Positions 5,161 through 51,167 of a stretch of DNA of 64,000 bases are shown in pieces. A model generated the notes under the pieces. That model was given only the letters and a program-made list of their open reading frames with translations. It ran no database searches and was not told the DNA's origin. Position numbers and translations under genes: made by a program. Position 1 is the stretch's first letter. Every line of letters starts with the position of its first letter. This DNA comes from Haliotis rubra. Its lineage: Eukaryota. The stretch lies in assembly GCF_003918875.1 (NCBI RefSeq), contig NW_025767038.1:372001-436000 (forward strand), written 5' to 3'.

Positions 5161-5324
5161 TGACAATCTGATGTCCAAGAGTAATTCTGGCACACCACCT
5201 CTTGCACGTAGAGTCTGAGGTCACTCACCCACTCACTCACGTCCTCATAGCAAAGCGGTTTTGAATGAAACACAAACAAACATCAGAAGAATCTAAATAA
5301 TGAAACAAGCTAAGTTATACTTAC

Positions 5325-11499: not shown

Positions 11500-11569
11500 G
11501 ATAGAGAAAACTGTCGCAGTTTATCAACTCTTGGAAGTGTAATGTTTCAATATTCCACACGTATATATA
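11500..11569 (-). promoter_or_regulatory. TATA box and non-coding first exon of DDGG gene copy B
   Basis: TATATATA at 11569-11562 and GTAAGT donor at 11499-11494, same as copy A. Confidence 0.7.
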
Positions 11570-15549: not shown

Positions 15550-15787
15550 GAGTGAGTGAGTGTGTTTAGTTTTACGCCGCACTCAGCAATATTCTAGCTA
15601 TATGGCGGCGGTCTGTAAATAATCGAGTCTGGAGCAGACAATCCAGTGAACAACAGCATGAGCATCGATCTACGCAATTAGGATATGATGACATATGTCA
15701 ACCAAGTCAGCGAGCCTGACCACCCGATCCCGTTAGTCGCATTTTACGACAACATGGGTTACTGAAGATCAATTCTAACCGGATCTT
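15550..15787 (-). mobile_element. SINE family B (abalone-type, head cccgtgaagatccgggttagaa, tail (actc)n)
   Basis: Dispersed ~240 bp repeat with several copies in the window. Confidence 0.85.
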
Positions 15788-16736: not shown

Positions 16737-17034
16737 TTTCACCACATGGGGATTCCTGGGACAAAATGGTCCCAAGTGTCATATGATTGTAATCAGTGCC
16801 GGCTAAAGGGGATTGGATGACCATCTGTCGGTGGATGGCATGGTGTGTGATGTGGTTTCAGTCACTGGCGTATCTGATCCGAACAGTCAGGATATAGAAG
16901 GACTGTTACTGAAATACCTTCAGCAACATTCACTTACTGACATGTACATTGACAGACATACAGGAGCATTGATTAGGCCAAAAACTAAAATAGTATATAT
17001 ATTATACGTTGACATTCCTGGGAAAAACATACCA

Positions 17035-17458
17035 TGATCTCCCCGCCGACCCTCGATCTCCACCGCCTCTCGATTCCCACCGACAATCGTTCCCTAACAA
17101 CCCTCGCTCTCAAACGAATCTCGCTCCATAACCACCCTCGCTCGCCAACGATGCTCATTCCCCACCGACCCTCGCTCCCAACCCAACCTTGCTCTCAACC
17201 GACCCTCACTCCCTACCCAACCTTGCTCACCACCGTTTCCTCGATCCCTACCCAACCTTGCTCTCAACAGTCCCTCGATCCCTACCCAACCTCTCAAGCA
17301 GATCTCGCTCCCTACTCACCCTCGCTTGCCAACGACTCTCATTCTCAACCGACCCTCGATCCCTATCCGACCTCGAGCTCGCTCCCCACCGACCCTTGCT
17401 CCCTACCAATTTTTAGGTCCATCGACCCTCGATCCCTATCCAATCTTGCTCCCCAAAC
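17035..17458. repeat. C-rich ~18-19 bp minisatellite (ccccaccgaccctcgctc-like); second block ~18138-18248
   Basis: Directly visible tandem degenerate units. Confidence 0.85.
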
Positions 17459-24820: not shown

Positions 24821-25627
24821 TCATATGTCTTGCAACCAATCAAAGCAATAAGGAGTGAATTCCGTGGTGGTAGTAACGGCGGGATCAATAACAGGCTCTG
24901 TCGTCTCATGTTCTACTACGTCGTCGTGGCTCTGAAGAGTTCCTGCAAAATATATGGCACATCTCTGATCATGTTATCCCGTCCGATAGGTGAGGTGATT
25001 TAAATGGGTTTAACGTCGTGCTTGAGAATATTTCGCTCATAGGATGACGTGCATGCATGTGTATGTGCGGCTGCTTGTACTAGCCCAGACTGAAGCTGGT
25101 TTTATAGTGCTAGCCCGCTGGGATACCATGCCGCAGTGAAGCATGAATACCCCACTCAGACACATTATACTGACTCCGAGCCGACCAGTCCTTGTTGTAC
25201 CCATTAATGCCGAGCGCCAGGCAGGGACCAACAAGTACCATATTTTAACGTCTTTTGGTATGACGCGGTCGGGGATCGAACCCGCGACCTTCCGCTCTCT
25301 GGGCGGACGCTCTAACCACTACACCACAGAGGTGGTCCTGTCCGAGAGCATCACAGTGATTCAGAAAGTGGCTGACGTTGGTCAAACTAAACCACGTCCC
25401 GGGTTAGCGGGTCAGAACCTCAACACTGAGAGACTAATGCAAAATCACCCTGTACTCATTCAAAACACCGTAGAGGCACGAGTAACTCTATTTATACTCA
25501 ATCATTGTTTGATTATCGACTGCAATGTTTTGTAAGAATTAAACAAAATATACCGACCTGCCCGCACATGGTAAAAGCATGCTGACTGCACGCGCAGAAC
25601 CGCAAGCAAAAGGACACGACCGTGCAT
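24821..25627 (-). CDS. Small secreted acidic His/Glu/Thr-rich peptide, paralog 1, 63 aa
   Basis: Exons 25627-25558 (phase 1, donor GTCGGT) and 24942-24821 (acceptor ttttgcag): MHGRVLLLAVLRVQSACFYHVRAGTLQSHDDVVEHETTEPVIDPAVTTTTEFTPYCFDWLQDI*. AATAAA at 24459-24454 is conserved with the paralog. Confidence 0.78.
24990..25335 (-). mobile_element. tRNA-derived SINE with Meta/MESC-like central domain (family C)
   Basis: tRNA-like head, core cataccaaaagacgttaaaa..ggtacttg..ggcgctcggcattaa..cagtataatgtg; imperfect 13-bp TSD at 24977-24989 and 25336-25348. Confidence 0.85.
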
Positions 25628-26285
25628 TGTTATTCTGTGATTTCTTCCTGAAAGTGTACCAAACAGTTTCCGGTATCATGTGCATTCAACATGGTATATT
25701 AAAAACATAATCGGTGACAACAAATTAAAAATACATTACATGGTTGACAGAAGGCAATCTTTCTAAAACAAATAACAAGTCAGTCGGTTATGTTTCCGTA
25801 TGACAGTGAGTGAGTGAGTCACATCGGCAACATCTAAGCCATATCGTGACGAGCCGTATGACAGTACAGATGGAGTTTCCTTTACGTATTATCAGAAGGA
25901 AGAGAGATTCATATTAACTACATCACCTTCGCGATCGTGCAGAATACGGAATAGCTGTCCAGGGTAAATAAATTTGCCAGATGTGTCCAGAAATAATTAC
26001 TTTTAAAAGATGCTGCGTTTCATAAACGATATACATATGTTCAATGTAAGGAATAACTTCATAAAAAAATAATTGTTATATAAAAAGTGCTATTTCTATA
26101 GATATAACACGAAATTATGTTCCATATGAGGAAACTCGAAGTCAACTGAACCATCGAAAGAATGGATTTATGCGCAGTTCAAACCGAACGCAGTAAGTCA
26201 ATCACTTGTTGGCAAAAATCATGACTACATGTTTCGAATTATAGTTCGATTTAACCAAATTTCGCTATTTTAAACGTTTACTTAC

Positions 26286-26355
26286 CGATGTAAAAAGCTG
26301 AAAGTCATTTCTTCCTGTTTCACTGCAAGTGACGTTAATATAAGCCATATATATA
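26286..26355 (-). promoter_or_regulatory. TATA box and non-coding exon 1 of paralog 1
   Basis: GGTATATATA (TATA 26355-26348) and GTAAGT donor at 26285-26280; both conserved in the paralog at 31.2 kb. Confidence 0.7.
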
Positions 26356-27258
26356 CCCAAATGTACCATCAACGACAATTACGATACAGACCACGCACTT
26401 TTTATAAAAAAAATAGGTCTATCTTTTATTTATTTATTGGCACAGCAAGTAGCATGTCAGACGTAATGTGCACGGGAATTGTCATTGTTAAAGGTATTTT
26501 AATTGTCGGATATATTCATTCAACAGCAATTCTGCATTTAAGTTGACATTGATAGTACTATTGAAAGTACAATGAAGGAAGGTATGAATGCCATTTATAT
26601 GTACAACGCTGTATAAACATCGATATATCCGAACGGAAACTAGCTTTACATGCGATAACCTGCCTCACTCAAGTGCTTCCTTATTATTACACCCAAGACA
26701 TAAATGAATCTAATTAAAGCTGAACTGACACGTAAGACACGTATGTGTACCCATCCTTGGGTACGCATTTCGAAGATCACTTAGCGAATGGCAAATGTCT
26801 TTGTTTGCATTGATGGATTGTCTTTATTTTTATGTAAACGAATACTAGTATATATATAAACGGCATGTAAGCTTCTTAAGCGTTTTCAGAGCTCAAATAG
26901 GAATAGAGAATAAGACCTGAATACTTGGTGATAGCTACATCTCACTTGAAAGACATTGATAGTAGATCCGATCTGTGGTAGTCATGAAAACCCGTTAACA
27001 AGTTTCGTCCATGTAATATTTCTGGTTCATACAATGTGTGTGAAACTAATGAATAGTCTTCCGCCTGTTTAAGGTGATAAATTGAACCGACATTTATAAA
27101 TCGGGTGTTGTTGCATCTTGTTACAGAACCATGCAGAGACATGTATGTTGTCTTAACCATCTCTTGTTTCATTATGTATATTGTATAACGACTACGCATG
27201 TATATTATTGTATCCTAAGGTTGCATTATTGCCGTCATAGTACACGGCCCAGATTCGT

Positions 27259-27512
27259 GAGTGAGTGAGTAATTGAGTTTAGTTTTACGCCGCACTCAGC
27301 AATATTCCAGATATATGGCGGCGGTGTGTAAGTAATCGAGTCTGGACCAGACAATCCAGTGATCAACAGCATGAACATCGATCTGCGCAGTTGGGAATCG
27401 CTGACATGTGGCAACCAAGTCAGCGAGTCTGAACACCCGATCTCGTTAGTCGCCTCTTACGACAAGCATGGGTTACTGAAGGTCAATGTTCTAACCCTGA
27501 CCTTCACGGGTT
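27259..27512 (-). mobile_element. SINE family B, full length with target-site duplication
   Basis: 11-bp TSD cccagattcgt at 27248-27258 and 27513-27523. Confidence 0.9.
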
Positions 27513-28455: not shown

Positions 28456-29973
28456 CATAAGATGCTGATGCTTACTTACTCAACACTTGACTCGCCTTTG
28501 AGTGAATTTGGGTGTCGCCAGTAAGAAAGAATGTTTACGCTCATTATTCGTCTTAAACACATAGTATCATCACAATCGGGTAATAATCATATAAACACTA
28601 GGTGACCCAGTCCACCCAGCTGTGAATGGGTACCTCGTTAGGATGAGAAAGCCACAATAACTCGGTGCGCCTGGTGGCTGCAAGAGTTGTATACTCCCCA
28701 GGGAGTTGAGAGTGATAATACGATGTGCTGTTGAGATTGACATCCAATGATCGAGGGAAAAAATACCAGCGCCTTGAGCATGCACTAGTTACGTGGATAT
28801 GTGCTCTATATAAATATCCTATAATAATGGTGATGGTATAGTATGTACCGTTAGTGTTGTGTGTTTGGTTTTTGTTTCACCCCAGCGATCAATGTTCAAA
28901 CTATATGATGGCGGTTTGTAAATATTCGTGTCTGGATCACATAATCCAGAGACATCATGTGTATTGTTCTAGGCATTATGGACAGGATGGATGATTTGAA
29001 ATAGGTCTGTAACTGCTATCTGCAGTGAACTAGTTCAACGTGGTTTATGTGTGTTATCAGGGCCGAATGAGTTGAAATTTGATTAGGAATGGCATCAAGA
29101 GTGTATAAGTTGAACCTGTCTCAGAAACGTTATCCGATGTGTATAATTGCGTTTCACAAACAAAATAAAGTTAGAGGTAGTGAAGTTTACCTCTTTGGTG
29201 GAACCTACAAAGAGAATGTGGTTGGGTTGGGTAGGATTCACAACTATGCAGAGTGAAAATATCCCACTGTGCTTCCCCTGTTTGTTACCTGAATTACTGA
29301 TTTGACATAACCATCTATGTAAATTTGTTTTATGATTTTTAAGAAAGAAAACAGACAAAGAGGAAGGGATGCAGTATTTGCATTGTTGGCAAAAGAGTCT
29401 CGGCATATTTAATGAACAAATTGTGAGTCCCTACTTATCGGTAAAAGAACATTATAGATCTAAGTGTTTAATCTTGACCCCAACAAAAATCGACTCAAAT
29501 AATGTTTTGCAAATTACAAGAGATCCACCATTCGATACCTTGACGAACTAGATCACAACAAGGGACACTAGGCCAGAATAATTGAAGCCATATATTTATT
29601 TTGCATCACATTTAGAAATATTAATAATTAGTGTTTCAAATGTAATGCACAAACGTCAAAATGGTAGCGAGTTTTACTTTCTTATATATTGTAGAAGATA
29701 CATTTTGTTACATTTGTATAAATAAGATGTGAAGGTGATACTTTTACAATAGTCATCCAGGGTTGCCCATTTAACTGTACATTCAAACTATTATCTGAAA
29801 GTGCTTTATTTTGTAGTTCGCCTTTTGTTCTGCCAAATGAGTTCACTGTAATGCGATATCAATCATCGCGTGATATGGCTGTATCCCAGCATATGTATTG
29901 AACTATCCTTTGAAAGTGGTTGTAAAATGTCAATAGGTCATAATAACATCAATTGGTTCAAACAGATCGGTAA

Positions 29974-30518
29974 TTATTGAATCAGATCAGGATCAGGAAC
30001 GTGTTCCGTGGTGGTAGTGAGGAGATCAGTAACAGGCTCTGTAGTCGTAGTCTCATGTTCTTCAACGTGGTCGTGGCTTGGTAGAGTTCCTGCAACATAT
30101 ATAACCCATCTCTGGTCAAGTCATCCTGTCATTTGGCATCACAGTGATTCAGAAACTGGCTGACGTTGGTCAAACTAAAACAAGTGTTAGTGGTTCAGTA
30201 CCTCAACACTGAGTGGCGACTATTCACCATGTATTCATACAAAACATCATGTACGCATGAGTCACACAACTCATGCTCGACCCGTTACACATATCCCAAA
30301 AGGTCACACCTTGTAGCAAACACATATTTCTGGAAATACACCGATATTGTCAAGTAGCTGAGTTTCAACTCAAAACGCAACACAGCTTTACAAAGTGTTT
30401 GATTATCGACTGCAATGTATTTGTATACATTAAGAAAATTATACCGACCTGCCACCAACTGGTAAAAGCATGCTGACTGCACGAGTAGAACCATGAGCAA
30501 AAGGCAGCGGCCGTGCAT
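29974..30518 (-). CDS. Small secreted acidic His/Glu/Thr-rich peptide, paralog 2, 61 aa
   Basis: Exons 30518-30449 and 30089-29974: MHGRCLLLMVLLVQSACFYQLVAGTLPSHDHVEEHETTTTEPVTDLLTTTTEHVPDPDLIQ*. Splice sites and frame are conserved with paralog 1; AATAAA at 29600-29595. Confidence 0.85.
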
Positions 30519-31189
30519 TGTTATTCTGTGGAATCTTTCTGAAATTGTCCAAAATAGTTTCCAGTGACATGTGCTTTCAAAATTAAAAACGCAATCGGTG
30601 ACAACAAGAAATTAAAAACACATTACATGGTGGACAGGAGTCAATCCTTCAAGACAGAAGCGACAATTTCCTTTCAATCCATAAGAAATCTCTGCTCAAA
30701 GCAGAGTCGATTGTACTGTTGTGAGCATATCATGAGTATATATAATACAAAGTCAGTCGGTTTATGATAGTACGGGTGGAGTTTCCTTAAGGTATTATCA
30801 GAAGAAAGAGAGCTTCATAATTATTAACGTCAACTTCTACATACGGAATATCTGTCAAGTTTAAATATATTTGCAAGATGTATTCAGAAATAATTACTTT
30901 TAAAGGATGCAGCGTTTTATGAAAGATGGTACACATGTTGCATGTTGAGAATAACTTCATAAATATATTTAGTATAAAAATGTGATATTTTTGTAGATAT
31001 AACATAAAAGTAAGCTCCATATGAGTAAAGCAGTTAACTCGAAGTCAACTAAACCATCGACAAAATTGATTTATGCGTAGTTCTAATCGAACGTTGCTAG
31101 TCGATCGCTCGTTGGCAAAGATCATAACTGGTGTTTCGAGTTATAGTTCGAGATCACAGAAGTTCGCTATATTGTAAATGTTTACTTAC

Positions 31190-31264
31190 TGATATATAGG
31201 CGCTGGAAGTTACTTCTTTCTGTTTCACGACCAGTGAGATTAATAAAAGCCGCACATATATATA
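31190..31264 (-). promoter_or_regulatory. TATA box and non-coding exon 1 of paralog 2
   Basis: GGTATATATA (TATA 31264-31257) and GTAAGT donor at 31189-31184. Confidence 0.7.
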
Positions 31265-31736
31265 CCTAAATGTTCCCACAACGACAATTACGATACGGAC
31301 CACGCACCTTTTAACAGGTTAGGTCTATCTTTTATTTATTTCTTTGCACTAGCAAGTAGGAGGTTAGGCGTAATGCGCACCAGAATTGTCATTGTTAAGT
31401 GTATTTTAATAGTCTGTTATATCCAGTCAACAGCAATTGTACATCTAAGTTTTATTGATAGTGAAACGTAGGGAGCCATCATTAACATTTGTATGTTCGT
31501 TATCGTATGTACAATGTGTATAAAAATCGATGCATCGCCTTCGAAATGAAAAGCTGTAGCCATACATGGGATGGGCTGGCTCACTCAAGACGTGGACCCT
31601 AATTATGACACCCAATACATAAATGAATCTGATTAAAATTGAACAGATACACTCGTGTGTTTTCCCATTCTTGGGTGCGTATTTCCAAGATCACTTGACG
31701 ATGTTTTGTGTTCGGACTGATGGATAGTGTTTATTT

Positions 31737-31879: not shown

Positions 31880-32018
31880 TTTGTTTTGACAGTTCAAACT
31901 AGGAATCCAGAATAACAACAAACTGTTTAGTGATAGAAATAGTTCACATGTAAGACGTTGCAGATTCGATTTGTGGTAGTCATGGAAACCGTTAACGTGC
32001 TTCGTCCATGAGTATATA

Positions 32019-32588
32019 TACGTAACAAACTTTGTTAAGCACCCCCTGACATATCTCACGATTGAATGAGCCCCAATCTTAACCCTTTGGAGCATGTCTG
32101 GGACATGATTGGTCGCCGTGTACAACAAAGGGACCTCCTGTACAGAAACTGGCCCAAATTGAAGGTGCTTTACACGAGGAATGGCGTAGACTGCCCCTTC
32201 AGAGGATCAGGAGGCTGACAGAGGGTATGTGGAGGAGGGTGCTGGCTGTTATACCGGAGGTTACACTCGGTATTGACTTTGATTCGTGTAAGACAAGCAA
32301 AAATGGCATTTTGAATGTTCACATTCACCAATAATTATATATTCAACATTAAACATGCCAGGGCCATACTTGTACAGACATAGTTTTGTATTGAAATCAG
32401 TGGGTGTGTTTTTTTCATCACAAAATCAACATGGATTCCAATCATTTTGTCTTTTTTTTCGTCCAAAAGGATCATCCGAGTCAGAAAAACGCTTGTTTTT
32501 CCATCGTGGTCACCACGAGAAATTTTGTATGCGTGTTGAAAACCTATCATTGCGAACATACAGGTGGTGCTTAATTAAGTTCTTTGTG
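32019..32588 (+). mobile_element. Internally deleted Tc1/mariner derivative with TIRs
   Basis: TIR-like ...ttaagcaccccctg / caggtggtgcttaa..., TA at both flanks, retains the SPNLNPLEHVWD transposase tail. Confidence 0.8.
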
Positions 32589-35055
32589 TATTATTTTAAA
32601 CATCTGGCTCAAGCAATGAAAGTCAAACTGGTGAGTAGCATTCCCAATGTGGAGCGTGATAAATTGAACCTATTTTTCCTTTTTCCTTTACATTACAACA
32701 CTATATGTGTAATGGAGCTTAGTGATTAAAATCTGTGATATACCAGCTGATTCTGGTTCGATCATCATATGGTGGCACAGTGGAAATCGTGTTCGTTTAG
32801 TCCCTTGCCACTGTGTGTCTGGACTATTGCTGAAGCGGCGTACAATGTAACTTCAGCATTACGTTGGGGTGTGCATGCCTAACCTCGATATAGTACCCTT
32901 GCTGATCATTACGTCCAACCTTAGTCTTCCATGCCACCGTAATATGGATGAAATATTGATGACTACGTCAATTAGCAATATTCAAGCTCAAAATAATCGA
33001 TTTGTCATTTCAAATGAAAACAGGTTGAAAATATACATAATTTTGTAGTTTTAACCGAAAAATACGAGTCACTTATCGTATACGTTGGGCAGTTGGTTCA
33101 TATATAGTACCAAGATAACACTGTATGATATAATACTCAATTAGATAATATTCAAATTGAATGAATCAATTACATTTGCTTTGTATGCGATTGTAACCCG
33201 ATCTCACGTGTTGCATGAATCAGTGGGAATTTGGGCATTTTATTATACATATATACAATATACTTCCCAATATAGTTTGGAACCCACTCGCCATAAGGGT
33301 AGAAGGTTTGGTTAAACAGATAGAGCATCATTGGGGATGGATGACTTGTTGACGTGGGAGCTGGGTTAACATCTGTTGACGGTCACTGAATAACAAACTA
33401 TGTTGTACTAACCTGCTGGACCATGGTGTGGACTCTGGCCAGTATATGATGGCAACGATCCTGTAAGCCTGTCTTCTAGGTGAACAGACTTGCAGGGGGA
33501 ACGATGACTCGTTTTCTCGGGGACGCGTGTTGACGATGATGAAATAGTGGTTGTCCAGCTGTTGCACGTCGTGCTGTTATCGACTAAGAGGATACGCGTC
33601 TCCTGACCTACATAGGACTCTAAAGATCTGTCCATGGTATTCTAATCATACAATTGCACACCGAAGAGTGACGGGTCTATAAATGATCTAAGTAATAAAG
33701 TATTTTCGAATATTGGTGCTACGTCGAGGAGACATGCGAGGAATAATAGAATAATAACTATTTGTTCATGTCTGATTTAGAAGCTTGCCCGCCGAATAGT
33801 GTGTGTGGGAATTGTGTGTACAGTGATATGGAAAGAAATGTTTGTGTTGCTGTAGTCCCATGTTGACAGAAAGCATAACATACACATAGTTGTCCAGAAG
33901 CAAGTGTACGTTTCTAGATGTGTAACTTTTCAAATGTATAGATGTACCACGAAATCATTCAACCAGTATAAATATCCGTTTTGAAAACGTCAGGATCAAC
34001 ATATTTACTCTTTATGTTAGCCTGTGATCGGTCAAAATTATTGTCACAGTCATCATGATTGGAGTCGCTGAAACAAACTGAGACTGTTATTTAAAATGTG
34101 TACACTTATCTAACGGTCAATGATCACCCTAAACACACAGAGACGATGCTCTAATTGCATAGTCTTACTTCTCTCTTTCTTGCACCGACAGTATTCCCTA
34201 CGAATGTTGGGAACAAGGCCATAAGGTGATGTTGGTACTTTATGTCAACAACAATCATGTATGTTTCAATTATCATTTTTCAAATACGGATTCCGTGGCA
34301 TGATAGATCTATATGACCAGTACTCGATTCGTATAGCAAGACTTATCGACATTTTCCTCGGTACTTCGAATGATCAAAGGGAGAGCACTTCTACTGTTTC
34401 TGTCTCCACTCGAGTAGCCGAATAAATTCATATAACTTATCATCGTTATGTACCAGTGATGAATATCCATTCACTATTCTTCGGAATTTTCTTGCATTCC
34501 ACGTACTTTCCAAAGGCTCTTTCAACTATATTCATATTCTTTTAAATTGATCAGACGAAATTCTTCATTATATATTAATTTTCCTCAAAAGAAGGCAAGC
34601 AGCACTTTTTAAGAACTTCCAATGCCTCCTTCACTTTCCCCATCCACCCACCAGGCCTCGACGCGTCATAAAAATTCATCTTCATGTTGGAATATTGTGT
34701 TTTGCATCCAAAATAAGCAATTTGTTGATGTTTGATAGTAGGAATCCCATTGGGAATTTAATTTAAAATAGGTCTTCTGCAAGCTTAAAGTTTGTTGGCC
34801 GTAAAAGGATCGAGTGCAGACTCGGTGGAATGGTTGACTGCGTATCATCATACACGGATCCGTCATTCCTTGAAAATAGCTCACTGGATATTGTTCGGGA
34901 CAGACATTATCTAAATGTTGCTGTCACGTATTGGGAATGTTGCAACTGACAGCGTCAAGCATAGACAAAAAAATATATCCTCGACTTGATTTTGTGTTGG
35001 GTATTTGATAACGCTTAGACAAGTGCATGTTGATATTCTACCCTGATAGTGATCA

Positions 35056-35480: not shown

Positions 35481-37369
35481 ATAAGGCAATATAAGGTGTA
35501 TACAAAACAATGGTCGAGTTTTAGTACCATCATACTTGACAGGTAATCGATGATCCTACTTCAACAGTCGACATATTTGGTCTAGACACGATGAATTACA
35601 GGCTGTTGGATGTACCTCTAAATTTGCTGACGTTGGCATGAAACCGCACACACTCACGTGTGCAACGGAAACTTTATGGAATTGTTTAACGCTGTAGAAA
35701 AGTCCCGAATTACCATTTAAATTAGTAATGGCAAATATCTGAAACACAGCAAACACATCGTACATTACGACATAATCTAAGTAGGAGATAAACATACTGC
35801 GTTGGAAAATCAGAGGTATATAACGAAATTATTATACCTCTGAATGACCTTAATTAACCAATCACAATCTAGTATTAACTGAAGTCATGTAGAATGTTAG
35901 AATGTGGATTATTACGTAGGTGAGTTAGGTTGTAGCAGTCATGCCAAGAATTTTGTTTCTAATACGTAAGAATTCACATTTCCAAGTACTAATCTCAACA
36001 GTAAACTACGGTTGCAACAAACCTTTCATGTACTCTGCTGCCACAAGACGTCACATGTACTTGGTACTTTCCAATCACGTATCATTTTACACAATTGTAA
36101 ATTAAATAATACATAAATGCATGCCCTCCTCAACCGTATGGGGTTTAAAAAATGTCATGATAAACATATTTGTTTAACTCTTTTAAAAGAAGAACTGCGA
36201 TCGGTCAGAATGACAGTCCTAGCCAGCACGATTCGAGCTGTTTAAACAATACCTGGATTGGTATCCTAAATATGTATGGTGCTGATCTGCCATATAATGA
36301 TACTAAATACATAAAGAATACAAAGAAACGCTGCCTAAATTGACCTAGTTCGGGAGAACAAATGGACTACTGCTTTATTATAAACCGTACCCCTTTTAGG
36401 CATGTTTGGTACATAGACAAACAGGAAGCCTGTGAAGTTTAGTGAAGGCCAACCGTTCCGAAAATGTGCCCACAAGATAAAATACCTTTGCTGAGAAGGG
36501 GCATCGCCTTCAGATAATGCGGCAGTAAAGTTTTCTCCCCCACCCGTACTAACAATTTATCGTCTCGTGTTATATGAAAATTGTCATTTCAAGTGAAAAC
36601 AGTTAATATAATGTTCAAAAACGTTTTAACCGAAAAGTACGTCTGACGTATTGGTAAATAAAACGCAGCACCAAACATGTGGTCTACAGCAATCCATGCC
36701 CCTTTCTCGCTGCCGTAAATGAAAGGGAGAAAGCAATGCCCCCTGTCTGCCACCATACATTGTAGATGTATGATCGTATTTCTAGGACTTACACACTGCG
36801 GGACGATATATTATACGACCGCATCGGTAAGTGGAAACCACGCTTATTGATTACATTCGGAACATGTGTTCGCAAAGGTGTTACCTGCATCAATACAGAT
36901 CAATATCTGTAATGCTGTACGGTGAAGTTTTATGCGGTGGTTCGGGATATGCAGCTTACAACATTATGAATGGTCTGTGAGCATTCAAGAACAGGACTAC
37001 TGTGATCGTTATAATCTGACTTGCAATATCAATATGTTATAATCATGTAATATATACATACACTCATTTCATATCAATGCATTTTCCATGATTAATGCAT
37101 TTTACATGGAGAGGGGATGACATTAATTAAATATTTGTGACCGAATGGACTCTCCCCGTGGGTCCCAACATAGTGTGAAATCTTGAAAGAATGAATTAAC
37201 GGATAGTTTAACAAAGTTTATTAAACATGCATGTTACCAGTAACTATGTCTTGTTTCATGATAGTTATTTTCTAACGCCTACGCATATAGATGTTTTTAT
37301 CTTAAGGCTGTATTATTGCCTTCATAGTACAGATTCAGTCACATATATAAGATGTCTTGTTTGGTTACT

Positions 37370-37563
37370 ATGTGGCGACGATCTGTACGTAATCGAGTCT
37401 GTACCAGTCAATCTAGTGATCAACAACATGAATATTGATCTACGCAACTGGGATACGATGACATGTGTCAACCAGTTCAGCGAACCTGACCACCCGATGC
37501 CGTTACTTGCCTCTTACAACAAGCTTAGGTTGCTGGAGATCAGTTCTAACCCGTATCTTCACG
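37370..37563 (-). mobile_element. SINE family B (diverged)
   Basis: Similar to 27259-27512. Confidence 0.8.
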
Positions 37564-37725
37564 TTTAACACAGATGTAAGAAACACGTAACCAGGTTCTT
37601 CCTGCTTGGTATACATGAACTTTATTGATAATGTAGAGAAAGGAAGCAGCATGGCGCATCATAAGAAACAACTATTTCCAGTAGACGGTGACAAATGTTG
37701 CTGCCGCAGTCGCGGAATGTTGCGT

Positions 37726-39645
37726 TTACTTCATCTCCAGTTCATACATTTCTTCAGAGAGGTCGGGGTCACCTAGATGTGTCTTTGTTGGGAACGTTGT
37801 ATCGTCGGTGACATCATCATCTTTAAATGAAAATGACAATGAACTAATATCAGAGAAGACAGCTGTTGACATACTGGTTATGAATATGATTAGTACCAAT
37901 ATACTAAAAAATAATAAAACTATATAATGCGTTCATATATATTACTAAGACTTTCGACAGTGTCTGGAAACTTGGCTTAGTGAAAGTTAGTGAAATATTG
38001 CTTACAGGAACATTGTAGAGATTGAAACAACATACGACCTACGTAGCTAGTCAAGGTTAACATTTATCTCCTTTGCTATTTTCAACAGTTACGATGTAAA
38101 TTACCTATAACATTTTACTTTTTTTATACATGGCTGCAAAGGGTTGGATATTAAAAGTTTGGACGATGGGAACATATTTACATGTGGTGCACTCCATTCT
38201 TGCTGATACTATATGCTAATGGCGTTGTCTCATTACGAGAAGACCTTGCATCTCCTGAAGCTACTTTCTAAGTTTTATGTGTTATTGAAGTGCAAAATAT
38301 TGCAAAAAAAACCCCAAACACCCAAACTCTCTGACATTGTAATGTAAGACATTACAAAAGTCGACGTATTTTTATCTTAGGCGACGAAGACATTTATGTA
38401 AAACATCATTGCGCCTAATTATGTTCCGTCAAAAGAAACAACATTTCAAAACGATAAAAACTTCAATTTGTCGAAAACCATTAAAAGCTAATTTATGTCT
38501 ACTAACGAATCCACAAAATACTACCTATAGTCAACCTCTCGATTCTCGTTTAATATCTGTAGCATGAGGGTGCACGTATATGTTATAGATCAGAGGTATG
38601 GGGTTTTGTAAACATTGATCAGCAGCGCTTGCCTTCTGTAAAACGACAGATCAAGATTCGCTAGGCGTTCTCCTGATCCGACCGTTTATTGGGTGTCCGC
38701 AGATCTCAACACAGAGTAGCATTGTGCTTGTGTGTTGTTTGACTCCACACTAAGCATTATTACAGCTAAGGGACGACGGTTGTAAACACACCAGACCGAA
38801 CCCGGCTATCCATTGGTTCTGGGGAACGTGCAATCTTAACCGAAATCCCCATAGTATCGTTATGCAGGGAGGTACCTTAAGGTGTAAAGCAGATTCTTGG
38901 GAGATTACGACAGATAGCTTCCAACACCAACGACAGAGTCAAGTTCAAGTGTAAGGCGGTCATAATGTGTGGCCAGTCTTATTGCCTGTTATAGTACATC
39001 GACGACTTGGGTTAGAATATGTACCCAACACAATATATATACCCAATTTATGTACCCAATTGCTTGTGGCAGTCGTCCTTTTGACTTCCGAGTGGTTTGT
39101 CTGTGCGTCTTTTAGTGTTGTGTGAACACTATTTTCTTTATCGATGAATCAATTCAGAGGCGTTGAATGAACGAGTGCCAAGATTACAGGTGAATTATTG
39201 ACAAGCAAAGGACAGATTTCATAGCGAATATCAAATTGAGTCATCCGTTAATTGACAATTTCTTTGCGAGTCACAAAAAATGCATGATTTTATTCCCATG
39301 TTTTGGGGGCGGCCTGTAGTTATCAAATCCCAACCAATGATTGATCGTCGTCGACCTGTACCATGACAAAGAATAAGTATCGCGTCAATTATTTTAGCAC
39401 CCGACCATAGCTTTGTTGGGTATTGTAAGGATGATGATTGAACATCTTTGTTGCAATTGTATTTTACCAGATTCAGTAGTGTCTTCAGTTGTGTCTTCAG
39501 TCGTGTCCTCGGTGTCGTCCTCAGTTGTGTCCTCCGTCGTATCCTCGGTGTGGTCCTCAGTTGTGTCCTCAGTAGTGTCCTCCGTTGTTTCAGTGTAGGC
39601 CAGGTGGAGGAACAATCCCAAGAAAAGGAGAAGTCTCAGTTTCAT
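37726..39645 (-). CDS. Secreted (TTED)n Thr/Glu/Asp-rich acidic protein, 90 aa
   Basis: Exons 39645-39468 (MKLRLLLFLGLFLHLAYTETTEDTTEDTTEDHTEDTTEDTTEDDTEDTTEDTTEDTTES, phase 1) and 37820-37726 (DDDVTDDTTFPTKTHLGDPDLSEEMYELEMK*). AATAAA at 37626-37621; acceptor before the ATG at 39668-39667. Confidence 0.88.
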
Positions 39646-40468
39646 GGTGTCTTTTTCGTATTCGTGCTGTAAGGTTAAGTTACAAAGCATGGTAAAGAGA
39701 TCAGGAATATGGCGTGATAATTCTGAAGTGCGATGTGTGCCCGTGTCTTGTATATATATGTGTATGTGTGTGTGTGATTGCATGAAATAATTCCGTTTCT
39801 TTTTGTGTCAGGCCACTGCCATATCATTCTAGAGTTAATCGTCCTCTTATTATGCTAATTCCGAGCCAACGGGTTCGCGTTCTCAACAACGCGGAGAACC
39901 AAGAGAGATACCGACAAGAACCATCATTTATCGCATTTTGGTACTGTCTGGAACGGCATCGAAGCAGCGACATTCTAATCTATTCAATATATCCAAGAGA
40001 CAACTCAGGTGTATGTATTATGTTATGTACAAAATAATTATGTAAAGCTGATGATATCTGCAGATGTAAAATACATTTGATGAATTACAGGACATTCAAT
40101 GCTCGCCATAGAATCAAGCTGATTAATCAGCTACACTTCTTTCCGTAGAGATCAGATTTACAAACTTCGCTTCCTCGTCAGATGTTCAATTTTTGCGTCA
40201 ACTAATCATGTTATTACATTCACATTTATACTAGCTGCTTATGGTGTTTGGCCTGTGGTAACATTATCCACAACTGGCAAATTACATTATTTCTAGTCTC
40301 AAGAGAATTATTTACCATCATCTGAAGTCATTTCCTCATTTTGATCTCCTCTTTCCAAAATGTATTTCTTTATCATTGTTGAGATACAGAACAAGTAACC
40401 ATAGTTTTCCTATTGTTCTAATCCCTCCTTTAGTTTGTAAAACTGTGAGAGACATATGTCATACTTAC

Positions 40469-40537
40469 CGAGGTAGCTGACGCTGTCGACCCTGGTTTGT
40501 CTTTACTGACGGGTCTCCGTGTCCCGGCTTTTAAATA
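40469..40537 (-). promoter_or_regulatory. TATA-like box, initiator and non-coding exon 1 of the TTED gene
   Basis: TATTTAAAA at 40537-40529, TCAGT Inr at 40509-40505 at canonical spacing, GTAAGT donor at 40468-40463. Confidence 0.72.
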
Positions 40538-41269
40538 ACACTAGTACACTTGCGTGGGAGGAGGGACCAGGATAGCAATGTTGGACATTTTAGAACCTCG
40601 ACAACAGCGACCTTGCAGGACACACATTGTATAGAAATTGTAACATGTGGAGGATGAGTAAATTATGCATCGATATGGAAATACATAAACCAAATCAGAG
40701 TTCCACTGAAGCATAAGTTCTCATTTTACAGAATGTGTATGTAATACCATATCCAGTTCTTAAACACACCCGCATGCCACCTTATATTCACTTGGGTAGC
40801 AATTGTGCCAAGTGACAAGTCAAATAAGTGTCGATAGAAGCTAGAAATTGTTCTTTGCGATTATCATTGACAGACACTCAGTGATATTTACTTGACATCT
40901 TTTCGTGGATGCTGTCAATACATTCGATGGACCATGTTAGTTTAATGGCTTTATAAACGATCTACATGTACCGATATTGATCCTTTACTCTGTTCAGATA
41001 AATTGTGCGCCCTGACGTTAAATATTTTAATCGTTGTGGCTTTTTAATTAAACGTCTCGGATTTTAAATCGACTTAAATCGTAAATTAGAAATGGCAAAA
41101 TGTATTGTGGATGATCGACACGAAACACTTTGATCTGACTGTGAATGGTCTGGATGCTAACGTAGTTATTTTTATGTTTCCGTCTGTGTCTGTATTGTGT
41201 TCAACAGAGAGATGAGACCATCGTGGATAATATCATATTGGTATTTGTCCTCGATGCAGATAAGTATAA

Positions 41270-41465
41270 CCCTTGAAGATCCGGATATGGTCTTCCGCAA
41301 CCCATGCTTGTCGTACGACACATGTCATTGTATCCCAATTACGTAGATCGATGATTATAGTGTTGATCACTGGGTTGTCTGGTGCTTACTCGAATATTTA
41401 CAGACCGCCACCATATAGTTGGATTATTGCTGGGTGCCACGTAAAACAACAAACCAACAAAAACA
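41270..41465 (+). mobile_element. SINE family B (internally deleted)
   Basis: Similar to the other family B copies. Confidence 0.75.
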
Positions 41466-41549: not shown

Positions 41550-42090
41550 TCACCCCCTGACATATCTCACGATTGAATGAGCCCCGATCTTAACCCTTTG
41601 GAGCATATCTGGGACATGAGTGGTCGTCGTATGCAACAAATGGATCCTCCTGTACTGAACCGGGCTAAATTGGAAGCTGCTTTACACGAGGAATGGCATA
41701 GTCAACCCCTTCAGAGGATCAGGAGGCTGATATGGGATATGAGGAGGAGAGTGCTGCCTGTTAGACAGTCACATGGAGGTTACACTGAGTCTCGGTATTG
41801 ACCTTGAGTCGTGTAAGACACGCAAAATCACATTTTGAATGTTCACATGCACCAACAAATTCAACATGAAACATTCCAGGGCCTACTTGAACAGACACGG
41901 TTTTGTATGAAAATCAGTATTTTTTTTAAATGAGCAATTGTCATCATAAAATCAACATGGATTCCAATCATTTTGCCGTTTTTATGACTCAAAAGATCAT
42001 ACGGGTCAGAAAAAACTCATGACGTTTAAAGTACGTGTTGAAATCTTATCATAGCACAAATACAGGGGTGCTTAATGAAATTATTTGTAT
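41550..42090 (+). mobile_element. Tc1/mariner deletion derivative, same family as 32019-32588
   Basis: MSPDLNPLEHIWD...MRRRVLPVRQSHGGYT and the same caccccctgacatatctcacg junction. Confidence 0.82.
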
Positions 42091-43498
42091 ATACATGTAT
42101 ATGGGCATTGTAATATGAGGGTAATGTCATATGATAATTACTTAGCACAACTTTCCTTGTGAGAGCACTGTGATTGGGTCGGTGTCTTTAGTGTATCAGT
42201 ATGATGAAACTATGGCGGTGACTGTACCCTAGCAAAAGGTAAATATTATACCCTGTGATAATCAAGGAAGGTTTTACGCGACTGCAGGTTTAAGTAGGTA
42301 GATTGAAAAGGGTCTTGTACGTTGCAGGTTATACTGCACTAAATCAGATTCCGTAGTTTAACAAACACTTTGAGTCGGGAGCCTTCAGTGCAGATTGAAT
42401 CATTTGATAGCTGTGATTTGGTGATATTTTGTAAGACCTTTCTTTGTAACTGTACATCCATCCAGTAATTAAACTGACCATATTTGTCAATATTTAGTGT
42501 TGTCGTTTTTAACACAATAACTTATGCTGAATTTGGGCAGAGATATTTTCAAGTTGGTGACATTTGGTGCGGAACTGGGATTGTTGTGTTCAACTTCCTG
42601 TACTCGGAAAAGGAACTTTGTGTTTCTATTGTGGCTTAAAAGCGATACTGTGCATATATATATACATTTAGTGGTTTTAAACAAGACAATATCACGTTCC
42701 TATGGAAGTCTATGGGAAAAAACGCCGCCATAAAACTGAACTGACTTTCTCTATGGGAAAATATGTGGATTTGTGTAATCTGAAGACCTCCATTCTTTGC
42801 TACAACTACAGCCATTATTCACAAGAGTGGAAATGTGCCAACTACTGGGGCACTTTACGACGCCGACGCATGTGCTTGAAATTGAAAGAAAGTACACAAA
42901 GTCAATACTAACGACAAAGGTTGGATTGGATTGGATTGGAACACAGAGTTATCCGATATCCAATAATTGACATTACCATTTTAATGCAAATACATGAACG
43001 TATAAATCCACGGATGCTGCGATTGATTTTAATTCAAGTAGTTTACAACGGACACTTTAACTACTCCATGATGCTCGAGGCTTTATACATTATGTCGATG
43101 TCGATACATAAACAGTACCAGGATTTTGAAATTGAAATTGCAGTACAGTTGCAACACATATTGCGCACACTATAAATGCAGCTGGTTAAGAGTCCATTGG
43201 ATAACATGTAAGGTTTTAGAAAGAGGAGGATGTTTATCCAGGTTAAATATTAGGTCACATTGTTTTGAAACAATGAACTATGACATAACCAATCCTTATT
43301 GTGCTGAGACAATGTAAGAACAGTAAATACTGTTGTAATAGATATATGTTAGATACATTTGGGAGCTGTATAATCAACGAAGAAAAAGTTACCTTGTTAA
43401 TGTCAATTCTTTGTTGTTCAAAGAGGCGTTTTGTGCCCAGCTGTTTGATAAAGATACCGTTATCTGTTGCAATCAACCATAGTACGGTTATCAGTAAT

Positions 43499-44636: not shown

Positions 44637-47249
44637 CTAGCCATTAGTTCTTGATGTGGAGACGATGTCATCGTTAGTGTTCGCGGCAGCAACAGTTGGG
44701 GGCTGTTCGTTCAAACTGCACACCACCTCTGTAGTTGACTCACACATACACTGGAAGTTGAGCACCATGTACCACTTGTTAAGGTCGAAGCAGTTCTGTT
44801 CGTCCAGTATCCCACACTGCTCTGAAAAGTCGTAAATACTGGTCTGTACATTGACAGTAGCATTCAGCTAGTCAGTCTGAAAATTACAGTGCTCAGGGCC
44901 AGAACATATTTTATAAGCCAGAACACTAGTATTGACCTTTATCCACCCACAAAAAGAAAAAATAAACACATGTATTGAAGACATGATGTGACTGACTACT
45001 GACCCGTTTCCTCTAAACACTTCATGTTTGGCATACCCGTGAAGATCCGGGTTAGAATTGATCGTCAGTAACCATGCTTGTCGTAAGAGGCGACTAGTGG
45101 GATCGGGTGGTCAGGCTCGCAGACTTGGTTGACGCATGTCATCGTATCTTAATTGTGTAGATCGGTGCTCATAATTTTGATCATTAGATTGTCTGGTCTA
45201 GACTCGAATATTTACAGAACGCCGTCATATGGCTGGAATCTTGCTGAGAGCGGCATTAAACAGCAGCCAACCAACCAACTATCATGTCTGGCACCTATGA
45301 CACGCCGCCTTTTAGCATGGCAACAAAGTGGACCTCTATACTGAAGAAAGACATTTTTGTGAAGTAACTGTGGTGCAAAGTACACCATTTATCATGACAG
45401 ACAGTTTCTTATGTAAAGCACTTAGCTTTTTTATTGCATTAGTACAAGAATACAGACATACTAATGAAAGGTAATGAATGCTTTTAAGTCACTTATGTCA
45501 TGGAATGAAATTTTACTAGTTGTTATATCAGTGTTGAAATATAGGGAAATTACATAAAGACTAGTCCAGGAAACATGATTAATAAGCATACCTTTAGCAC
45601 CGGAGTTAACGAGCCACATGTACTTCTTCCCATTGAAAGTGTGGTCCGAATCCTTGCACACAAATGCTTGGCAGCCATACCGTTCCAGTCCCGGAACACA
45701 ACCACCTTTTCCCATGCAGCCTGTTAACGGATAGAATATACAGGAGTGTGTTTTAGGTGTTATATTAGTAGGTAGCTGTTGGTAGCATCTGGATGTACTG
45801 TGATAAATCACTGAACTACAGTAGCGTTATTCGTGATATTGCCATCCCCGCACGCAACATCAAGAATATGACGATTATAGAGAGACGATATTAACATGAT
45901 GTATCAAGTTTAAGTCGCCTTTAAACACAGGGTTCCATATGAATGGCAACCGTGAAGATCCGGGTTAGAATTGATCTTCAGTAACCCATGTTTTTCGTAA
46001 GAGGTGACGAACGGGGTCGGGTGGCCAGTCTCGCTGACTTGGGTGACACATGTCATCGTATCCCAATGGCGTAGATCGAAGCGTGTGCTGTTGATCACTG
46101 GGTTTTCTGGTCGAGACTCGATTATTGACAGACCACCGCCATATACCTGGAATAGCGGCGTAAAACCAAACTCATTCACTCACGCCATATAAATGGAAGA
46201 CACTCAATACCAATGGTGATCAGTCAATCCATCATCCCATCCATTTGTCAACACATCCGTCCAGCAGGTTCATTACACACACAATGAGTACATAACCATA
46301 ACAGTTAGAACAAAAAGCTGCTGTCAAAGAATAAAACACACATTACCAAGCAACGGCCTGCCATAGAACCTCACCTGAACCTTCTTTAAGGCTGACACCG
46401 GTATTGGTACAGAGATAGGTAACACAAGGTCCTGTGATGTCCAGACTAAACTCTCCATCATAGATTTTCGTAGTGCCGTTTATATCGCATCCCTCCTCGT
46501 TCAAGGTGTACACAATTTCAGCTGAAAACATTACGAATGTATCACTGACCTTCTGTAATTACTCTATTGTGAAGGTATCGATATATAAATGTCCCTGCTT
46601 TTCCCTTGAAGTACATGGTCACTTAATTAAAAATAAAACGAAAATAAAACCACAATAAAACACAAACAACATTTTACTTCTGACCATGACCTCGATGTGT
46701 CACGCTCTTTCAGGGACTCAGAGGAGGTGCACAGCAATATTTTATATTTGCTGTTTTCATAATTATATCAACAATATAAATCACTGAATTGTCTGGTCTA
46801 TCACTGAACTGATATGGAAGGAACATTGCTGAGTGTAGCATCTATTTACATGGATTAAAGGATGACGTCAACTTTGACCGGCGTATCGCTGTATTTGTAA
46901 CTAACAGGGGACACAGAATTGGGTGTTATAACACTGCTTATATAAGTGGGTGTCAGATATCAACATTTACGTCAAATATACGTAAGTATGACGTAAGCTG
47001 AAACAGCGTCTCCTCGCTGCACCATGGCTGTAGCTTTTCCAGTAAGATACATAACTACCATTTTTTGAAGACAGAATGTCAAAATACAGTGCACAGTTAA
47101 AAGTGAACACATCACAAATATTTTGGTCGTAGATTTTGTTCATTCTGTTTACCATATAGCTCTGGTTGGAGTGTCATTGAGATTATTCCTGGTCTGGACA
47201 TCACAACCGGCATCAAGGTAAGGGCAATGGACACCAACACCCAGCGCAT
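44637..47249 (-). CDS. Secreted cysteine-rich protein (12 Cys, VWC/fibronectin-I-like modules), ~185 aa
   Basis: Four exons joined by phase-1 introns: 47249-47153 (MRWVLVSIALTLMPVVMSRPGIISMTLQPELY), 46521-46375 (AEIVYTLNEEGCDINGTTKIYDGEFSLDITGPCVTYLCTNTGVSLKEGS), 45720-45592 (GCMGKGGCVPGLERYGCQAFVCKDSDHTFNGKKYMWLVNSGAK), 44821-44637 (EQCGILDEQNCFDLNKWYMVLNFQCMCESTTEVVCSLNEQPPTVAAANTNDDIVSTSRTNG*). All GT-AG and in frame. An upstream exon ending at 48279 may add MLMEMPSSRRPALA. The domain label is tentative. Confidence 0.85.
45036..45280 (+). mobile_element. SINE family B in an intron of the Cys-rich gene
   Basis: cccgtgaagatccgggttagaattg...gcggcattaaac. Confidence 0.85.
45950..46183 (+). 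mobile_element. SINE family B in an intron of the Cys-rich gene
   Basis: ccgtgaagatccgggttagaattg...aaactcattcactc. Confidence 0.85.
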
Positions 47250-49690: not shown

Positions 49691-51167
49691 CACTCTTCCA
49701 ACACAAATGAAAGTTGGTACGCAAATGTCAAATCAAGCATGTTTTGAGGATTGAATATTGCTGTTGGTATGGTTTAGAAGAACATGCGTGAGCGAATGCA
49801 ACCATAAACAATTTTGAATGGTTTTATTGACCATGATTGTCATGATGAGCTTGACTGGTATGGAATACAACCAAAAGCCGCAATTATAGCTTTTTCGCGT
49901 GCAACCTATGACTATAAAATACCCAAATGTATGTCCTAAATTCACCCAGGACCCTTGCAAATATTGGATGAGAAAATGGGACGTCTCAGCGATGCCCACC
50001 GAAATATTGCCATTGGACGATTACAAGCTGGCGAATCCAAGAGTGTCGTGGCGAAGACCTTCAGCGTTCATCCCAGCACAATACCTCGTTTGTGGGATCG
50101 TTTTGTGCATTCCATTTCGACAAATGACCAACCAAGACCAGGAAGACCGTGAGTCACCACACAGCCCAAGATCGATACATCCGGGTAACCCAATTACGTG
50201 ACAGCCATCATTCCGCCCGGGACACTGCACAAGAACGGTTTGTAGCCCGGAGAATGTCCGACCAGACAAAGAGGAACCGTTTCCGAGAGGTAGATATGCG
50301 TGCCAGACGTCCACAAGTTGAACCCTCTCTGACACGATTACATCAACGTCCGTGAGTCAGGTGGTGTAACGCGGTGCACTCATTGGCCTTGGAAACTGGA
50401 CGCACATGTGGTTTAATGATGAATCGCGGTATCCCCCAAAGCAACGTGACGGAAGACAGCGTGTCTACAGACCACGGAAAGAACGTTTTGCATCCAAATG
50501 CATTAAGCAAGTGGACAGATTTGGTGGAGATGGTGTGATGATGTGGGGAGCTATGTCATGCACCTGCAGATCGGAATTGGTGCTCGTCCAAGGCAATCTA
50601 AATGCCGCGAGATATATCGACCAGATTCTCTGTCCTCACGTGCATCGTCTTGTCGACCGCCAAAGGGAGCTGTACCACCAGGACAACGCCAGACCTCACA
50701 CAGCACGTGCTACAGTGGACTACCTGGACAAAAACAACATCAGTGTCCTCCCCTGGCCCTCCAGATCCCCGGATCTGAAACCAATTGATTATGTGTGGGA
50801 TCAGATAGATAACCGTGTACGTCAACATCGTAATCCGCCATTGAGGCTTTAACAGTAACTGTTGTTAAACATGCTGCAGGAGGAATGTAGGATTCCACAA
50901 CGAAACATCCAACAACTGATTCAATCTGTGTCAAGGAGGTGCCGTGCAGTTCTAGCAGTAAGAGGTGGCCCTAGAAGGTAGTAACGTCAACGTCACCTCG
51001 TGGACAGCAGTAATGACTATGATGACTATCATTCTTTGAAGTGTGTACGAGATACCAACGTATTGCTCTACATAATTTCAATGCTCAACCGTTTATTTTC
51101 GTTGATTTACATAACTGAATAAGTTTTCAATGATATTTTGCTTTTGCGTTTCTTTTTTTGAAGAGTG
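49691..51167 (+). mobile_element. Full-length but inactivated Tc1/mariner transposon
   Basis: TA-flanked ends cactcttc / gaagagtg; transposase ~49976-50983 (MGRLSDAHRNIAIGRL..HTH; WFNDESRY; HQDNARPH; SPDLKPIDYVW) with stops and frameshifts. Confidence 0.92.

What the first reader, a model, noticed from the sequence alone, without database searches (positions are those of the whole stretch)
37726..39645. (TTED)10 secreted protein sharing a C-terminal HxxDPDL motif with the 30 kb peptide
After the signal peptide come about ten TTED-type units, then DDDVTDDTTFPTKTHLGDPDLSEEMYELEMK. The motif T-H-L-G-D-P-D-L aligns with E-H-V-P-D-P-D-L in the 61 aa paralog, so a short functional motif may persist despite repeat turnover. 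Thr followed by acidic residues could be heavily phosphorylated or O-glycosylated (inference), which would make a phosphoprotein-like polyanion.
Basis: partly seen in the sequence, partly recalled or inferred. Interest (0 to 1): 0.7.

Follow-up and report, generated by a model that had tools for sequence, protein, structure and literature searches.

The report
Unannotated abalone acidic Thr-repeat secreted peptide
This looks like an unlisted abalone gene for a tiny, very acidic secreted protein made of ten Thr-Thr-Glu-Asp units, but I found no evidence that it is expressed or spliced as proposed, and the motif it shares with a neighbouring peptide gene is probably chance.

Summary
The sequence features are real. 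On the minus strand, an ATG at 39645 opens an 18-residue signal peptide. Ten in-frame TTED-type units follow, then a GT donor after 39468. An AG acceptor before 37820 continues in phase 1 into a 31-codon Asp/Thr-rich tail, followed by a stop and an AATAAA signal.

Differences among the repeat units fall mainly on third codon positions (15/40 against 6/80, p=1.7e-4), so this frame has been under coding constraint.

The splice itself is unverified. No RNA run held the stretch, and no protein in the searched collections matches either exon. The only DNA runs found come from a relative about 5% diverged, and they do not cover the exons.

The shared H-x-x-D-P-D-L motif exists, but support is weak:
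- The two tails align at shuffle p=0.022.
- The two loci share no DNA similarity apart from mobile elements.
- A closer paralogue of the 30 kb gene, newly found at 24.8-25.6 kb, lacks the motif.

Best reading: a lineage-restricted secreted polyanion of about 8.3 kDa and pI about 3. It is one of a same-strand cluster of small, fast-evolving secreted acidic peptide genes in what earlier notes call Haliotis rubra. A shell-matrix or mucus role and Thr phosphorylation or glycosylation are inference only. The scan had already noted the neighbouring (DDGG)n gene in this window.

The parts
39468..39645 (-). Coding part of the signal/repeat exon (178 nt, 59 codons + 1 base, phase 1), followed by a GTAAAA donor at 39467-39462
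39592..39645 (-). Predicted signal peptide, about 16-18 residues (n-region K2/R4, hydrophobic core, A at -3 and T at -1 before residue 19)
   Evidence: Read; judged by the -3/-1 rule only, since no SignalP was available
39469..39588 (-). Ten TTED-type units (12 bp each), organised as three 36-bp higher-order units
   Evidence: third-position bias, Fisher p=1.7e-4
39667..39668 (-). Acceptor-like CAG after a pyrimidine-rich stretch, 21 nt upstream of the ATG; may mark a 5'-UTR intron, as at the same distance in the neighbouring genes
   Evidence: inference; no RNA
39752..39758 (-). TATA-like heptamer inside a (CA)n(TA)n microsatellite, 107-113 nt upstream of the ATG
   Evidence: weak
37821..39467 (-). 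Proposed intron (1647 nt, GT..AG, acceptor TTAAAG)
   Evidence: not confirmed by RNA
37726..37820 (-). Proposed terminal coding exon: 2 bases of the split Asp codon, 30 codons, then TAA (37728-37726)
37759..37782 (-). THLGDPDL motif
37621..37626 (-). AATAAA polyadenylation signal, about 100 nt after the stop; a SINE-like repeat begins just beyond it (37368-37566)
29974..30518 (-). The 30 kb two-exon peptide gene model (61 aa; exon 1 is 30518-30449, exon 2 is 30089-29974; EHVPDPDL at 30006-29983)
24821..25627 (-). Newly found closer paralogue of the 30 kb gene (exon 1 is 25627-25558, exon 2 is 24942-24821); its tail lacks the DPDL motif

Best explanation
A lineage-restricted, unannotated gene (in the blacklip abalone, according to earlier notes of this scan) with two coding exons. 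It encodes a precursor of about 90 residues: a signal peptide, a short-period array of ten TTED-type units, and a 31-residue acidic tail. After signal cleavage it would give a disordered polyanion of about 73 residues and 8.3 kDa, with pI about 3.1, net charge about -30, and a composition of Thr 33%, Asp 23% and Glu 21%.

Shown:
- The array grew by slippage or duplication of a 36-bp (12-residue) unit.
- The array has been kept in frame under selection on the peptide.
- The gene sits in a same-strand cluster of similarly built small secreted acidic peptide genes: two (DDGG)n copies and the 25 kb/30 kb pair.

Inferred:
- It is secreted and acts through its charge, most plausibly as a cation- or mineral-binding component of the mantle secretion (shell matrix) or of mucus.
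- The Thr residues may be modified.
- The HxxDPDL resemblance to the 30 kb peptide is most likely chance or, at best, a trace of very old paralogy. It is not a demonstrably conserved functional motif.
For: Gene-like anatomy:
- A at -3 of the ATG, a signal peptide, and an in-frame array.
- Unit differences concentrate at third codon positions and are all synonymous there: 15 of 40 against 6 of 80 at positions 1-2, p=1.7e-4.
- A GT donor in phase 1.
- The 37820 acceptor ranks first of 345 phase-compatible AG sites in 12 kb for Asp/Glu/Thr content of the first 12 codons. It has a 15/20 pyrimidine tract.
- AATAAA lies 100 nt after the stop.

Physical properties come from residue counts.

Cluster context:
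- The DDGG genes have a signal exon with a phase-1 donor.
- The 25 kb/30 kb pair has the same layout.
- All of these have an acceptor-like CAG 20-22 nt before the ATG.

No family membership:
- Pfam gives only a sub-threshold New_glue match.
- No homologue by word search or exhaustive search.

The motif is not conserved in the 25 kb paralogue, and the loci share no DNA homology.
Against: - No expression evidence. No RNA run held at least 5% of the sampled words of 37400-39900.
- No predicted protein in collections that include transcript assemblies matches either exon.
- The acceptor is AAG, an uncommon type.
- Contigs of a relative about 5% diverged cover the flanks (36143-37466 and 39987-41346) and bits of the intron, but not the exons. 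Conservation is therefore unknown and the locus may be unusually divergent.
- Much of the third-position variation is inherited within the 36-bp higher-order unit, so the number of independent events is smaller than the raw counts.
- The role (shell, mucus or other) has no direct support.
Confidence: 0.55

Rival explanations
1. One reading: the TTED gene and the 30 kb gene are paralogues. Their mature parts were replaced by repeat turnover, while a C-terminal HxxDPDL motif (for sorting, processing or binding) is kept by selection.
For: - The only two DPDL tetrapeptides in the six-frame translation both lie near the C-termini of neighbouring same-strand signal-peptide genes.
- The alignment extends beyond the motif (V-T-D, a Thr run, then H..DPDL; 10 of 20 identical), with shuffle p=0.022.
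- Both genes have a phase-1 intron and an acceptor-like CAG 20-21 nt before the ATG.
Against: - The nearest paralogue of the 30 kb gene (25 kb copy) has lost the motif through a 2-nt indel and D-to-Y / D-to-A changes.
- In that pair the exons are no better conserved than the introns: 71-81% against 72-74%.
- There is no DNA similarity between the loci. The shared upstream piece is a mobile element.
- The p-value is marginal and post hoc, and no orthologues were found.
Confidence: 0.15
2. Exon 1 is real but the 3' end differs. Either the transcript reads through the donor to the stop at 39396-39394 and uses the AATAAA at 39294-39289 (83 aa with a hydrophobic tail), or it splices to another exon.
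For: - The in-frame read-through is open for 24 more codons, and a canonical polyA signal lies 100 nt after that stop.
- The proposed acceptor is AAG.
- No RNA evidence confirms the junction.
Against: - The read-through tail breaks the composition and looks like intron sequence.
- The 37820 exon continues the Asp/Thr composition in the right phase, which no other of 345 candidate sites outside the 30 kb gene does. It also has its own polyA signal.
Confidence: 0.15
3. It is not a functioning gene. It is either a silent or decaying copy in a fast-turnover cluster, or a chance ORF over a 12-bp minisatellite.
For: - No RNA holder.
- No matching protein in any collection searched.
- The relative's contigs do not cover the exons.
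- 12-bp arrays are open in several frames.
Against: - The start codon context, the signal peptide directly fused in frame, and the synonymous bias of unit differences in exactly this frame.
- There are no stops or frameshifts.
- A phase-matched terminal exon and a polyA signal.
- A neighbouring gene of the same build is reportedly highly transcribed.
Confidence: 0.15

Closest known systems
Acidic repetitive low-complexity shell-matrix proteins of molluscs (aspein, asprich, MSP-1; acidic disordered repeat proteins of the Haliotis laevigata shell, PMC6003135; rapidly evolving mantle secretomes, PMC4897951)
   Same: Signal peptide, pI about 3, short tandem repeats, predicted disorder, no domains, restricted to one lineage, and fast evolution in gene clusters.
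   Different: Here the array is Thr/Glu/Asp rather than Asp/Gly/Ser. There is no sequence homology, no proteomic detection and no expression evidence. A search of the held (truncated) supplements of PMC6003135 found no TTED-type peptide.
Biomineral phosphoprotein polyanions (dentin phosphophoryn; oyster MPP1 and folian-cv1). These are named from my own knowledge and were not tested here.
   Same: A hydroxyl residue alternates with acidic residues, so eight Thr fit S/T-x-E and eight fit S/T-x-x-D/E acidophilic kinase patterns. Phosphorylation would roughly double the charge.
   Different: Those proteins use Ser, and secretory-pathway kinases prefer Ser over Thr. No modification data exist for this protein.
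Drosophila new-glue proteins (Pfam PF21827)
   Same: Secreted proteins of about 100 residues: a signal peptide followed by Thr-rich short repeats. This is the only Pfam match (E=4.7e-4, residues 1-57).
   Different: The score of 20.3 bits is below the curated cut-off of 31. The match is driven by the signal peptide and composition, and the family is insect-specific. It is an analogy, not membership.
Mucin-type Thr-rich tandem repeats
   Same: Dense Thr pairs in a secreted tandem array could carry O-glycans.
   Different: It lacks the Pro/Ser content of mucin repeats, half of the residues are acidic, and the array is very short (40 residues).

Membership tests
Pfam PF21827 New_glue | Whole-protein score at or above the curated gathering cut-off (31 bits) | tested here: not met
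   20.3 bits, E=4.7e-4, for exon 1
Paralogue family with the 30 kb / 25 kb peptide genes | Detectable DNA or protein homology beyond composition | tested here: inconclusive
   No DNA similarity except mobile elements. Tail alignment score 38, shuffle p=0.022.
Paralogue family with the 30 kb / 25 kb peptide genes | HxxDPDL motif kept among family members | tested here: not met
   The 25 kb copy reads TTTTEFTPYCFDWLQDI at the homologous place.
Paralogue family with the 30 kb / 25 kb peptide genes | Shared exon architecture (phase-1 intron; acceptor-like site 20-22 nt before the ATG) | tested here: met
   However, phase-1 introns after signal peptides are common in secreted proteins generally, and in the TTED gene the intron follows the repeats rather than the signal peptide.
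Mollusc shell-matrix proteins | Expression in mantle epithelium and/or detection in shell extracts | not testable with these tools
   No RNA holders. No TTED-type peptide in the held supplements of PMC6003135, which are truncated and from another species.
Mollusc shell-matrix proteins | Secretion signal plus acidic, repetitive, disordered mature part | tested here: met
Secreted phosphoproteins / O-glycoproteins | Experimentally observed modification of the Thr residues | not testable with these tools
   Only motif counts are available: 8 S/T-x-E and 8 S/T-x-x-D/E.

The most novel reading that the evidence does not exclude
The (DDGG)n genes, the 25 kb/30 kb pair and the TTED gene are one tandemly duplicated family that keeps only its scaffold: a 5'-UTR intron ending 20-22 nt before the ATG, a signal peptide and a phase-1 intron. 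The mature peptide is rewritten wholesale by repeat birth and frameshifts. This would give abalone a local 'generator' of new acidic secreted peptides, with DPDL as a surviving ancestral tail.
Probability: 0.12. Interest if true: 0.55.

Novelty: new member of a known kind. Interest (0 to 1): 0.3.

Why it matters
If it is expressed, this would add an unlisted, extremely acidic Thr-rich peptide to the abalone secretome. Mollusc mantle secretomes are known to be full of such lineage-specific repeat proteins, so the kind is familiar.

Its practical value is modest. It shows that very small repeat genes escape annotation, and it offers a testable proteotypic peptide: the tail after the single internal Lys. 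The cluster as a whole is a compact example of how secreted low-complexity peptides diverge faster than their gene scaffold.

Tried and rejected
1. RNA support. The look-up of sequencing runs (kind rna) found no RNA holder. The two runs returned are DNA-like contigs of a relative about 5% diverged, and they do not cover the exons. The many 'joints' between 374xx and 412xx-414xx are short contigs of a SINE-like family present at both places. They are not a deletion allele.

2. Homologue searches, exon by exon and by reference. All were blank apart from one spurious bacterial Ig-repeat protein (P0001, multi-stretch sum):
- exon 1 word search;
- the 57-aa ORF holding exon 2;
- 30 kb exon 2;
- exact look-ups of three genomic ORFs;
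- exhaustive phmmer of the 30-aa exon 2 against 1.84 billion representatives;
- ESM Atlas features;
- a metagenome scan.

This also means that an exact look-up of the spliced product could not be done.

3. The 81% match between 32040-32489 and 41551-42014, upstream of both genes, looked like a trace of duplication. I rejected this reading. The piece is an insertion of about 590 bp in the 30 kb copy relative to the 25 kb copy, so it is a mobile element.

4. The bacterial promoter/terminator scan is irrelevant for an animal gene.

5. Literature. No abalone shell paper in the library mentions a Thr-rich or TTED protein.

6. The 17-kb Pro/Ser/Thr/Leu-rich ORF (17034-17468) was rejected as a family member. 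Its repeat period is 17/34 bp, not a multiple of three.

Full report
**What is there**

On the minus strand, an ATG at 39645 (A at -3) opens a reading frame. It starts with a typical signal peptide: basic residues at 2 and 4, an 11-residue Leu/Phe core, and small residues at -3/-1 before residue 19.

The frame then runs through ten 4-residue units: seven TTED, one HTED, one DTED and a final TTES. Tandem Repeats Finder reports the array at 39473-39588 with period 12 and a 36-bp higher-order period. The units group as three 12-residue super-units.

The exon ends at 39468 (178 coding bases, phase 1) before GTAAAA. An AG at 37822-37821, preceded by a 15/20 pyrimidine tract, opens a 31-codon continuation rich in Asp and Thr. 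It contains THLGDPDL and ends at TAA 37728-37726. AATAAA follows at 37626-37621, just before a SINE-like repeat.

**Is exon 1 coding?**

Differences among the ten units lie at third codon positions in 15 of 40 cases, against 6 of 80 at first and second positions (Fisher p=1.7e-4). Every third-position difference is synonymous.

Part of this variation is inherited within the 36-bp super-unit, so the number of independent events is smaller than the raw count. The direction is still clear: the peptide, not the DNA, has been preserved in this frame.

**Is the splice right?**

I scanned all 567 AG sites in the 12 kb downstream of the donor. Of these, 345 give at least ten open codons in phase 1. 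The 37820 site ranks first for Asp/Glu/Thr content of its first 12 codons (9 of 12). It is matched only by sites inside the 30 kb gene.

Two things count against it:
- The acceptor is AAG, an uncommon type.
- A read-through alternative exists, with a stop at 39396-39394 and AATAAA at 39294-39289.

No RNA evidence could be obtained. The two runs it returned are contigs of a relative about 5% diverged. They cover 36143-37466 and 39987-41346 and scraps of the intron, but not the exons. A hole in contigs proves nothing, so conservation remains unknown.

**Relatives**

The joined protein was never built for, or sent to, a search.

- Exon 1 (59 aa) and the 57-aa ORF holding exon 2 found nothing in the word-indexed collection.
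- Exact look-ups of three genomic ORFs found nothing.
- An exhaustive phmmer search of the 30-aa exon 2 against 1.84 billion representatives gave only a spurious bacterial Ig-repeat protein.
- The ESM Atlas and a metagenome scan were blank.
- Pfam gives one sub-threshold match of exon 1 to the insect New_glue family: 20.3 bits against a cut-off of 31. This is an analogy of build (signal peptide plus Thr-rich repeats), not membership.

Earlier notes of this scan assign the genome to the blacklip abalone, whose RefSeq proteins other agents found in these collections. The gene is therefore apparently unannotated.

**The shared motif**

The 61-aa model at 30 kb is correct: exon 1 is 30518-30449 in phase 1, exon 2 is 30089-29974, and EHVPDPDL lies at 30006-29983. 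DPDL occurs only twice in the six-frame translation, both times in these tails.

A local alignment of the two tails extends to V-T-D, a Thr run and H..DPDL, with a score of 38. Composition-preserving shuffles reach that score in 2.2% of trials. That is marginal for a pair chosen after the fact.

Three results weigh against a conserved motif:
- A self-comparison of the window shows that 24098-26829 is a 72-74% copy of 29268-31736. It holds an intact-looking paralogue: exon 1 is 25627-25558 and exon 2 is 24942-24821. Its tail reads TTTTEFTPYCFDWLQDI. At the homologous place there is a 2-nt indel, and the Asp codons are Tyr and Ala codons.
- In that pair the exons (71-81% identity) are no better conserved than the introns, so these peptides evolve almost freely.
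- The TTED locus and the 30 kb locus share no DNA similarity. The one 81% match upstream of both (32040-32489 against 41551-42014) is an insertion of about 590 bp in the 30 kb copy relative to the 25 kb copy, so it is a mobile element.

**What does link the genes**

The (DDGG)n gene (signal exon from 3831, phase-1 donor; duplicated 6.2 kb away), the 25 kb and 30 kb genes and the TTED gene have several things in common. All lie on the minus strand. All have a phase-1 intron. All have an acceptor-like CAG 20-22 nt before the ATG.

The background rate for such a site anywhere 18-28 nt upstream of an ATG in this window is 11%. This hints at a common scaffold with a 5'-UTR intron, but only RNA can show it. 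In the TTED gene the phase-1 intron follows the repeats, not the signal peptide.

**What it most likely is**

From residue counts, the mature product would be about 73 residues and 8.3 kDa, with pI about 3.1 and net charge about -30. Its composition is Thr 33%, Asp 23% and Glu 21%, with no Cys and no dibasic processing sites.

This is the profile of the acidic, repetitive, disordered, lineage-specific proteins that dominate mollusc mantle secretomes and shell matrices (PMC4897951, PMC6003135). I therefore read it as a secreted polyanion that binds cations or mineral surfaces, or that contributes to mucus.

Eight Thr fit S/T-x-E and eight fit S/T-x-x-D/E, so phosphorylation is conceivable, and so is O-glycosylation of the Thr pairs. 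Both are inference. The known biomineral phosphoproteins use Ser.

**Verdict**

- The sequence observation holds.
- The gene is plausible but unproven: I put about 0.7 on exon 1 being a real coding exon, and about 0.6 on the proposed splice given that.
- The motif-conservation idea is weak (about 0.15).

The kind of protein is familiar, so interest is modest.

Noticed in passing
window 2725-3831 and 8930-10012 (minus strand): Two copies of the (DDGG)n secreted protein gene lie in a 6.2-kb tandem duplication (1236-7444 against 7444-13623, 96% identical), with a partial third unit reaching about 14289. From memory only: its size and Asx/Gly-dominated composition recall the never-sequenced 8-kDa acidic AP8 nacre proteins of Haliotis rufescens (Fu et al. 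2005, cited in PMC6003135). This is a lead, not a test.
   Followed up: partly
window 24821-25627 (minus strand): A previously unnoted paralogue of the 30 kb peptide gene, with the same two-exon build. It has an Arg inside the signal-peptide core and a frameshifted C-terminal tail. An element at 24988-25299 interrupts the copy; its other copy lies at 58503-58822.
   Followed up: yes
window 47153-47249, 46521 and 44821 (minus strand): Another signal-peptide-like first exon (ATG 47249, phase-1 GGTAAAC donor at 47153, acceptor-like CAG 26 nt before the ATG). Downstream there are phase-compatible Cys-containing ORFs starting at 46521 and 44821. This may be a further secreted-protein gene.
   Followed up: partly
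window 3854, 25648, 30539, 39667 (minus strand): Acceptor-like pyrimidine tract plus CAG 20-22 nt upstream of the ATG in the DDGG, 25 kb, 30 kb and TTED genes. This suggests a shared 5'-UTR intron position.
   Followed up: partly
window 32011-32602 and 41551-42092: Two copies (81% identical) of a non-coding mobile element of about 550-590 bp. The first is an insertion in the 30 kb copy relative to the 25 kb copy.
   Followed up: yes
window 15550-15787, 27263-27509, 37368-37566, 41290-41400, 45037-45261, 45948-46183: A SINE-like repeat family. It reaches enormous depth in the relative's contigs and caused the false 'joints' in the read layout.
   Followed up: partly
window 50406-50852 (+): An ORF that looks, by eye, like a Tc1/mariner-type transposase C-terminal half. 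It was not run against family libraries.
   Followed up: no
window 17076-17323 and 18175-18247: Minisatellites with 17/34/85-bp periods that create a long Pro/Ser/Thr/Leu-rich ORF (17034-17468, +). The period is not a multiple of three, so the ORF is probably not coding.
   Followed up: partly
window 37656-39986: Contigs of the roughly 5% diverged relative stop at 37466 and 39987 and cover the TTED locus only in scraps. The locus may therefore be much more divergent, or structurally different, in that species.
   Followed up: no
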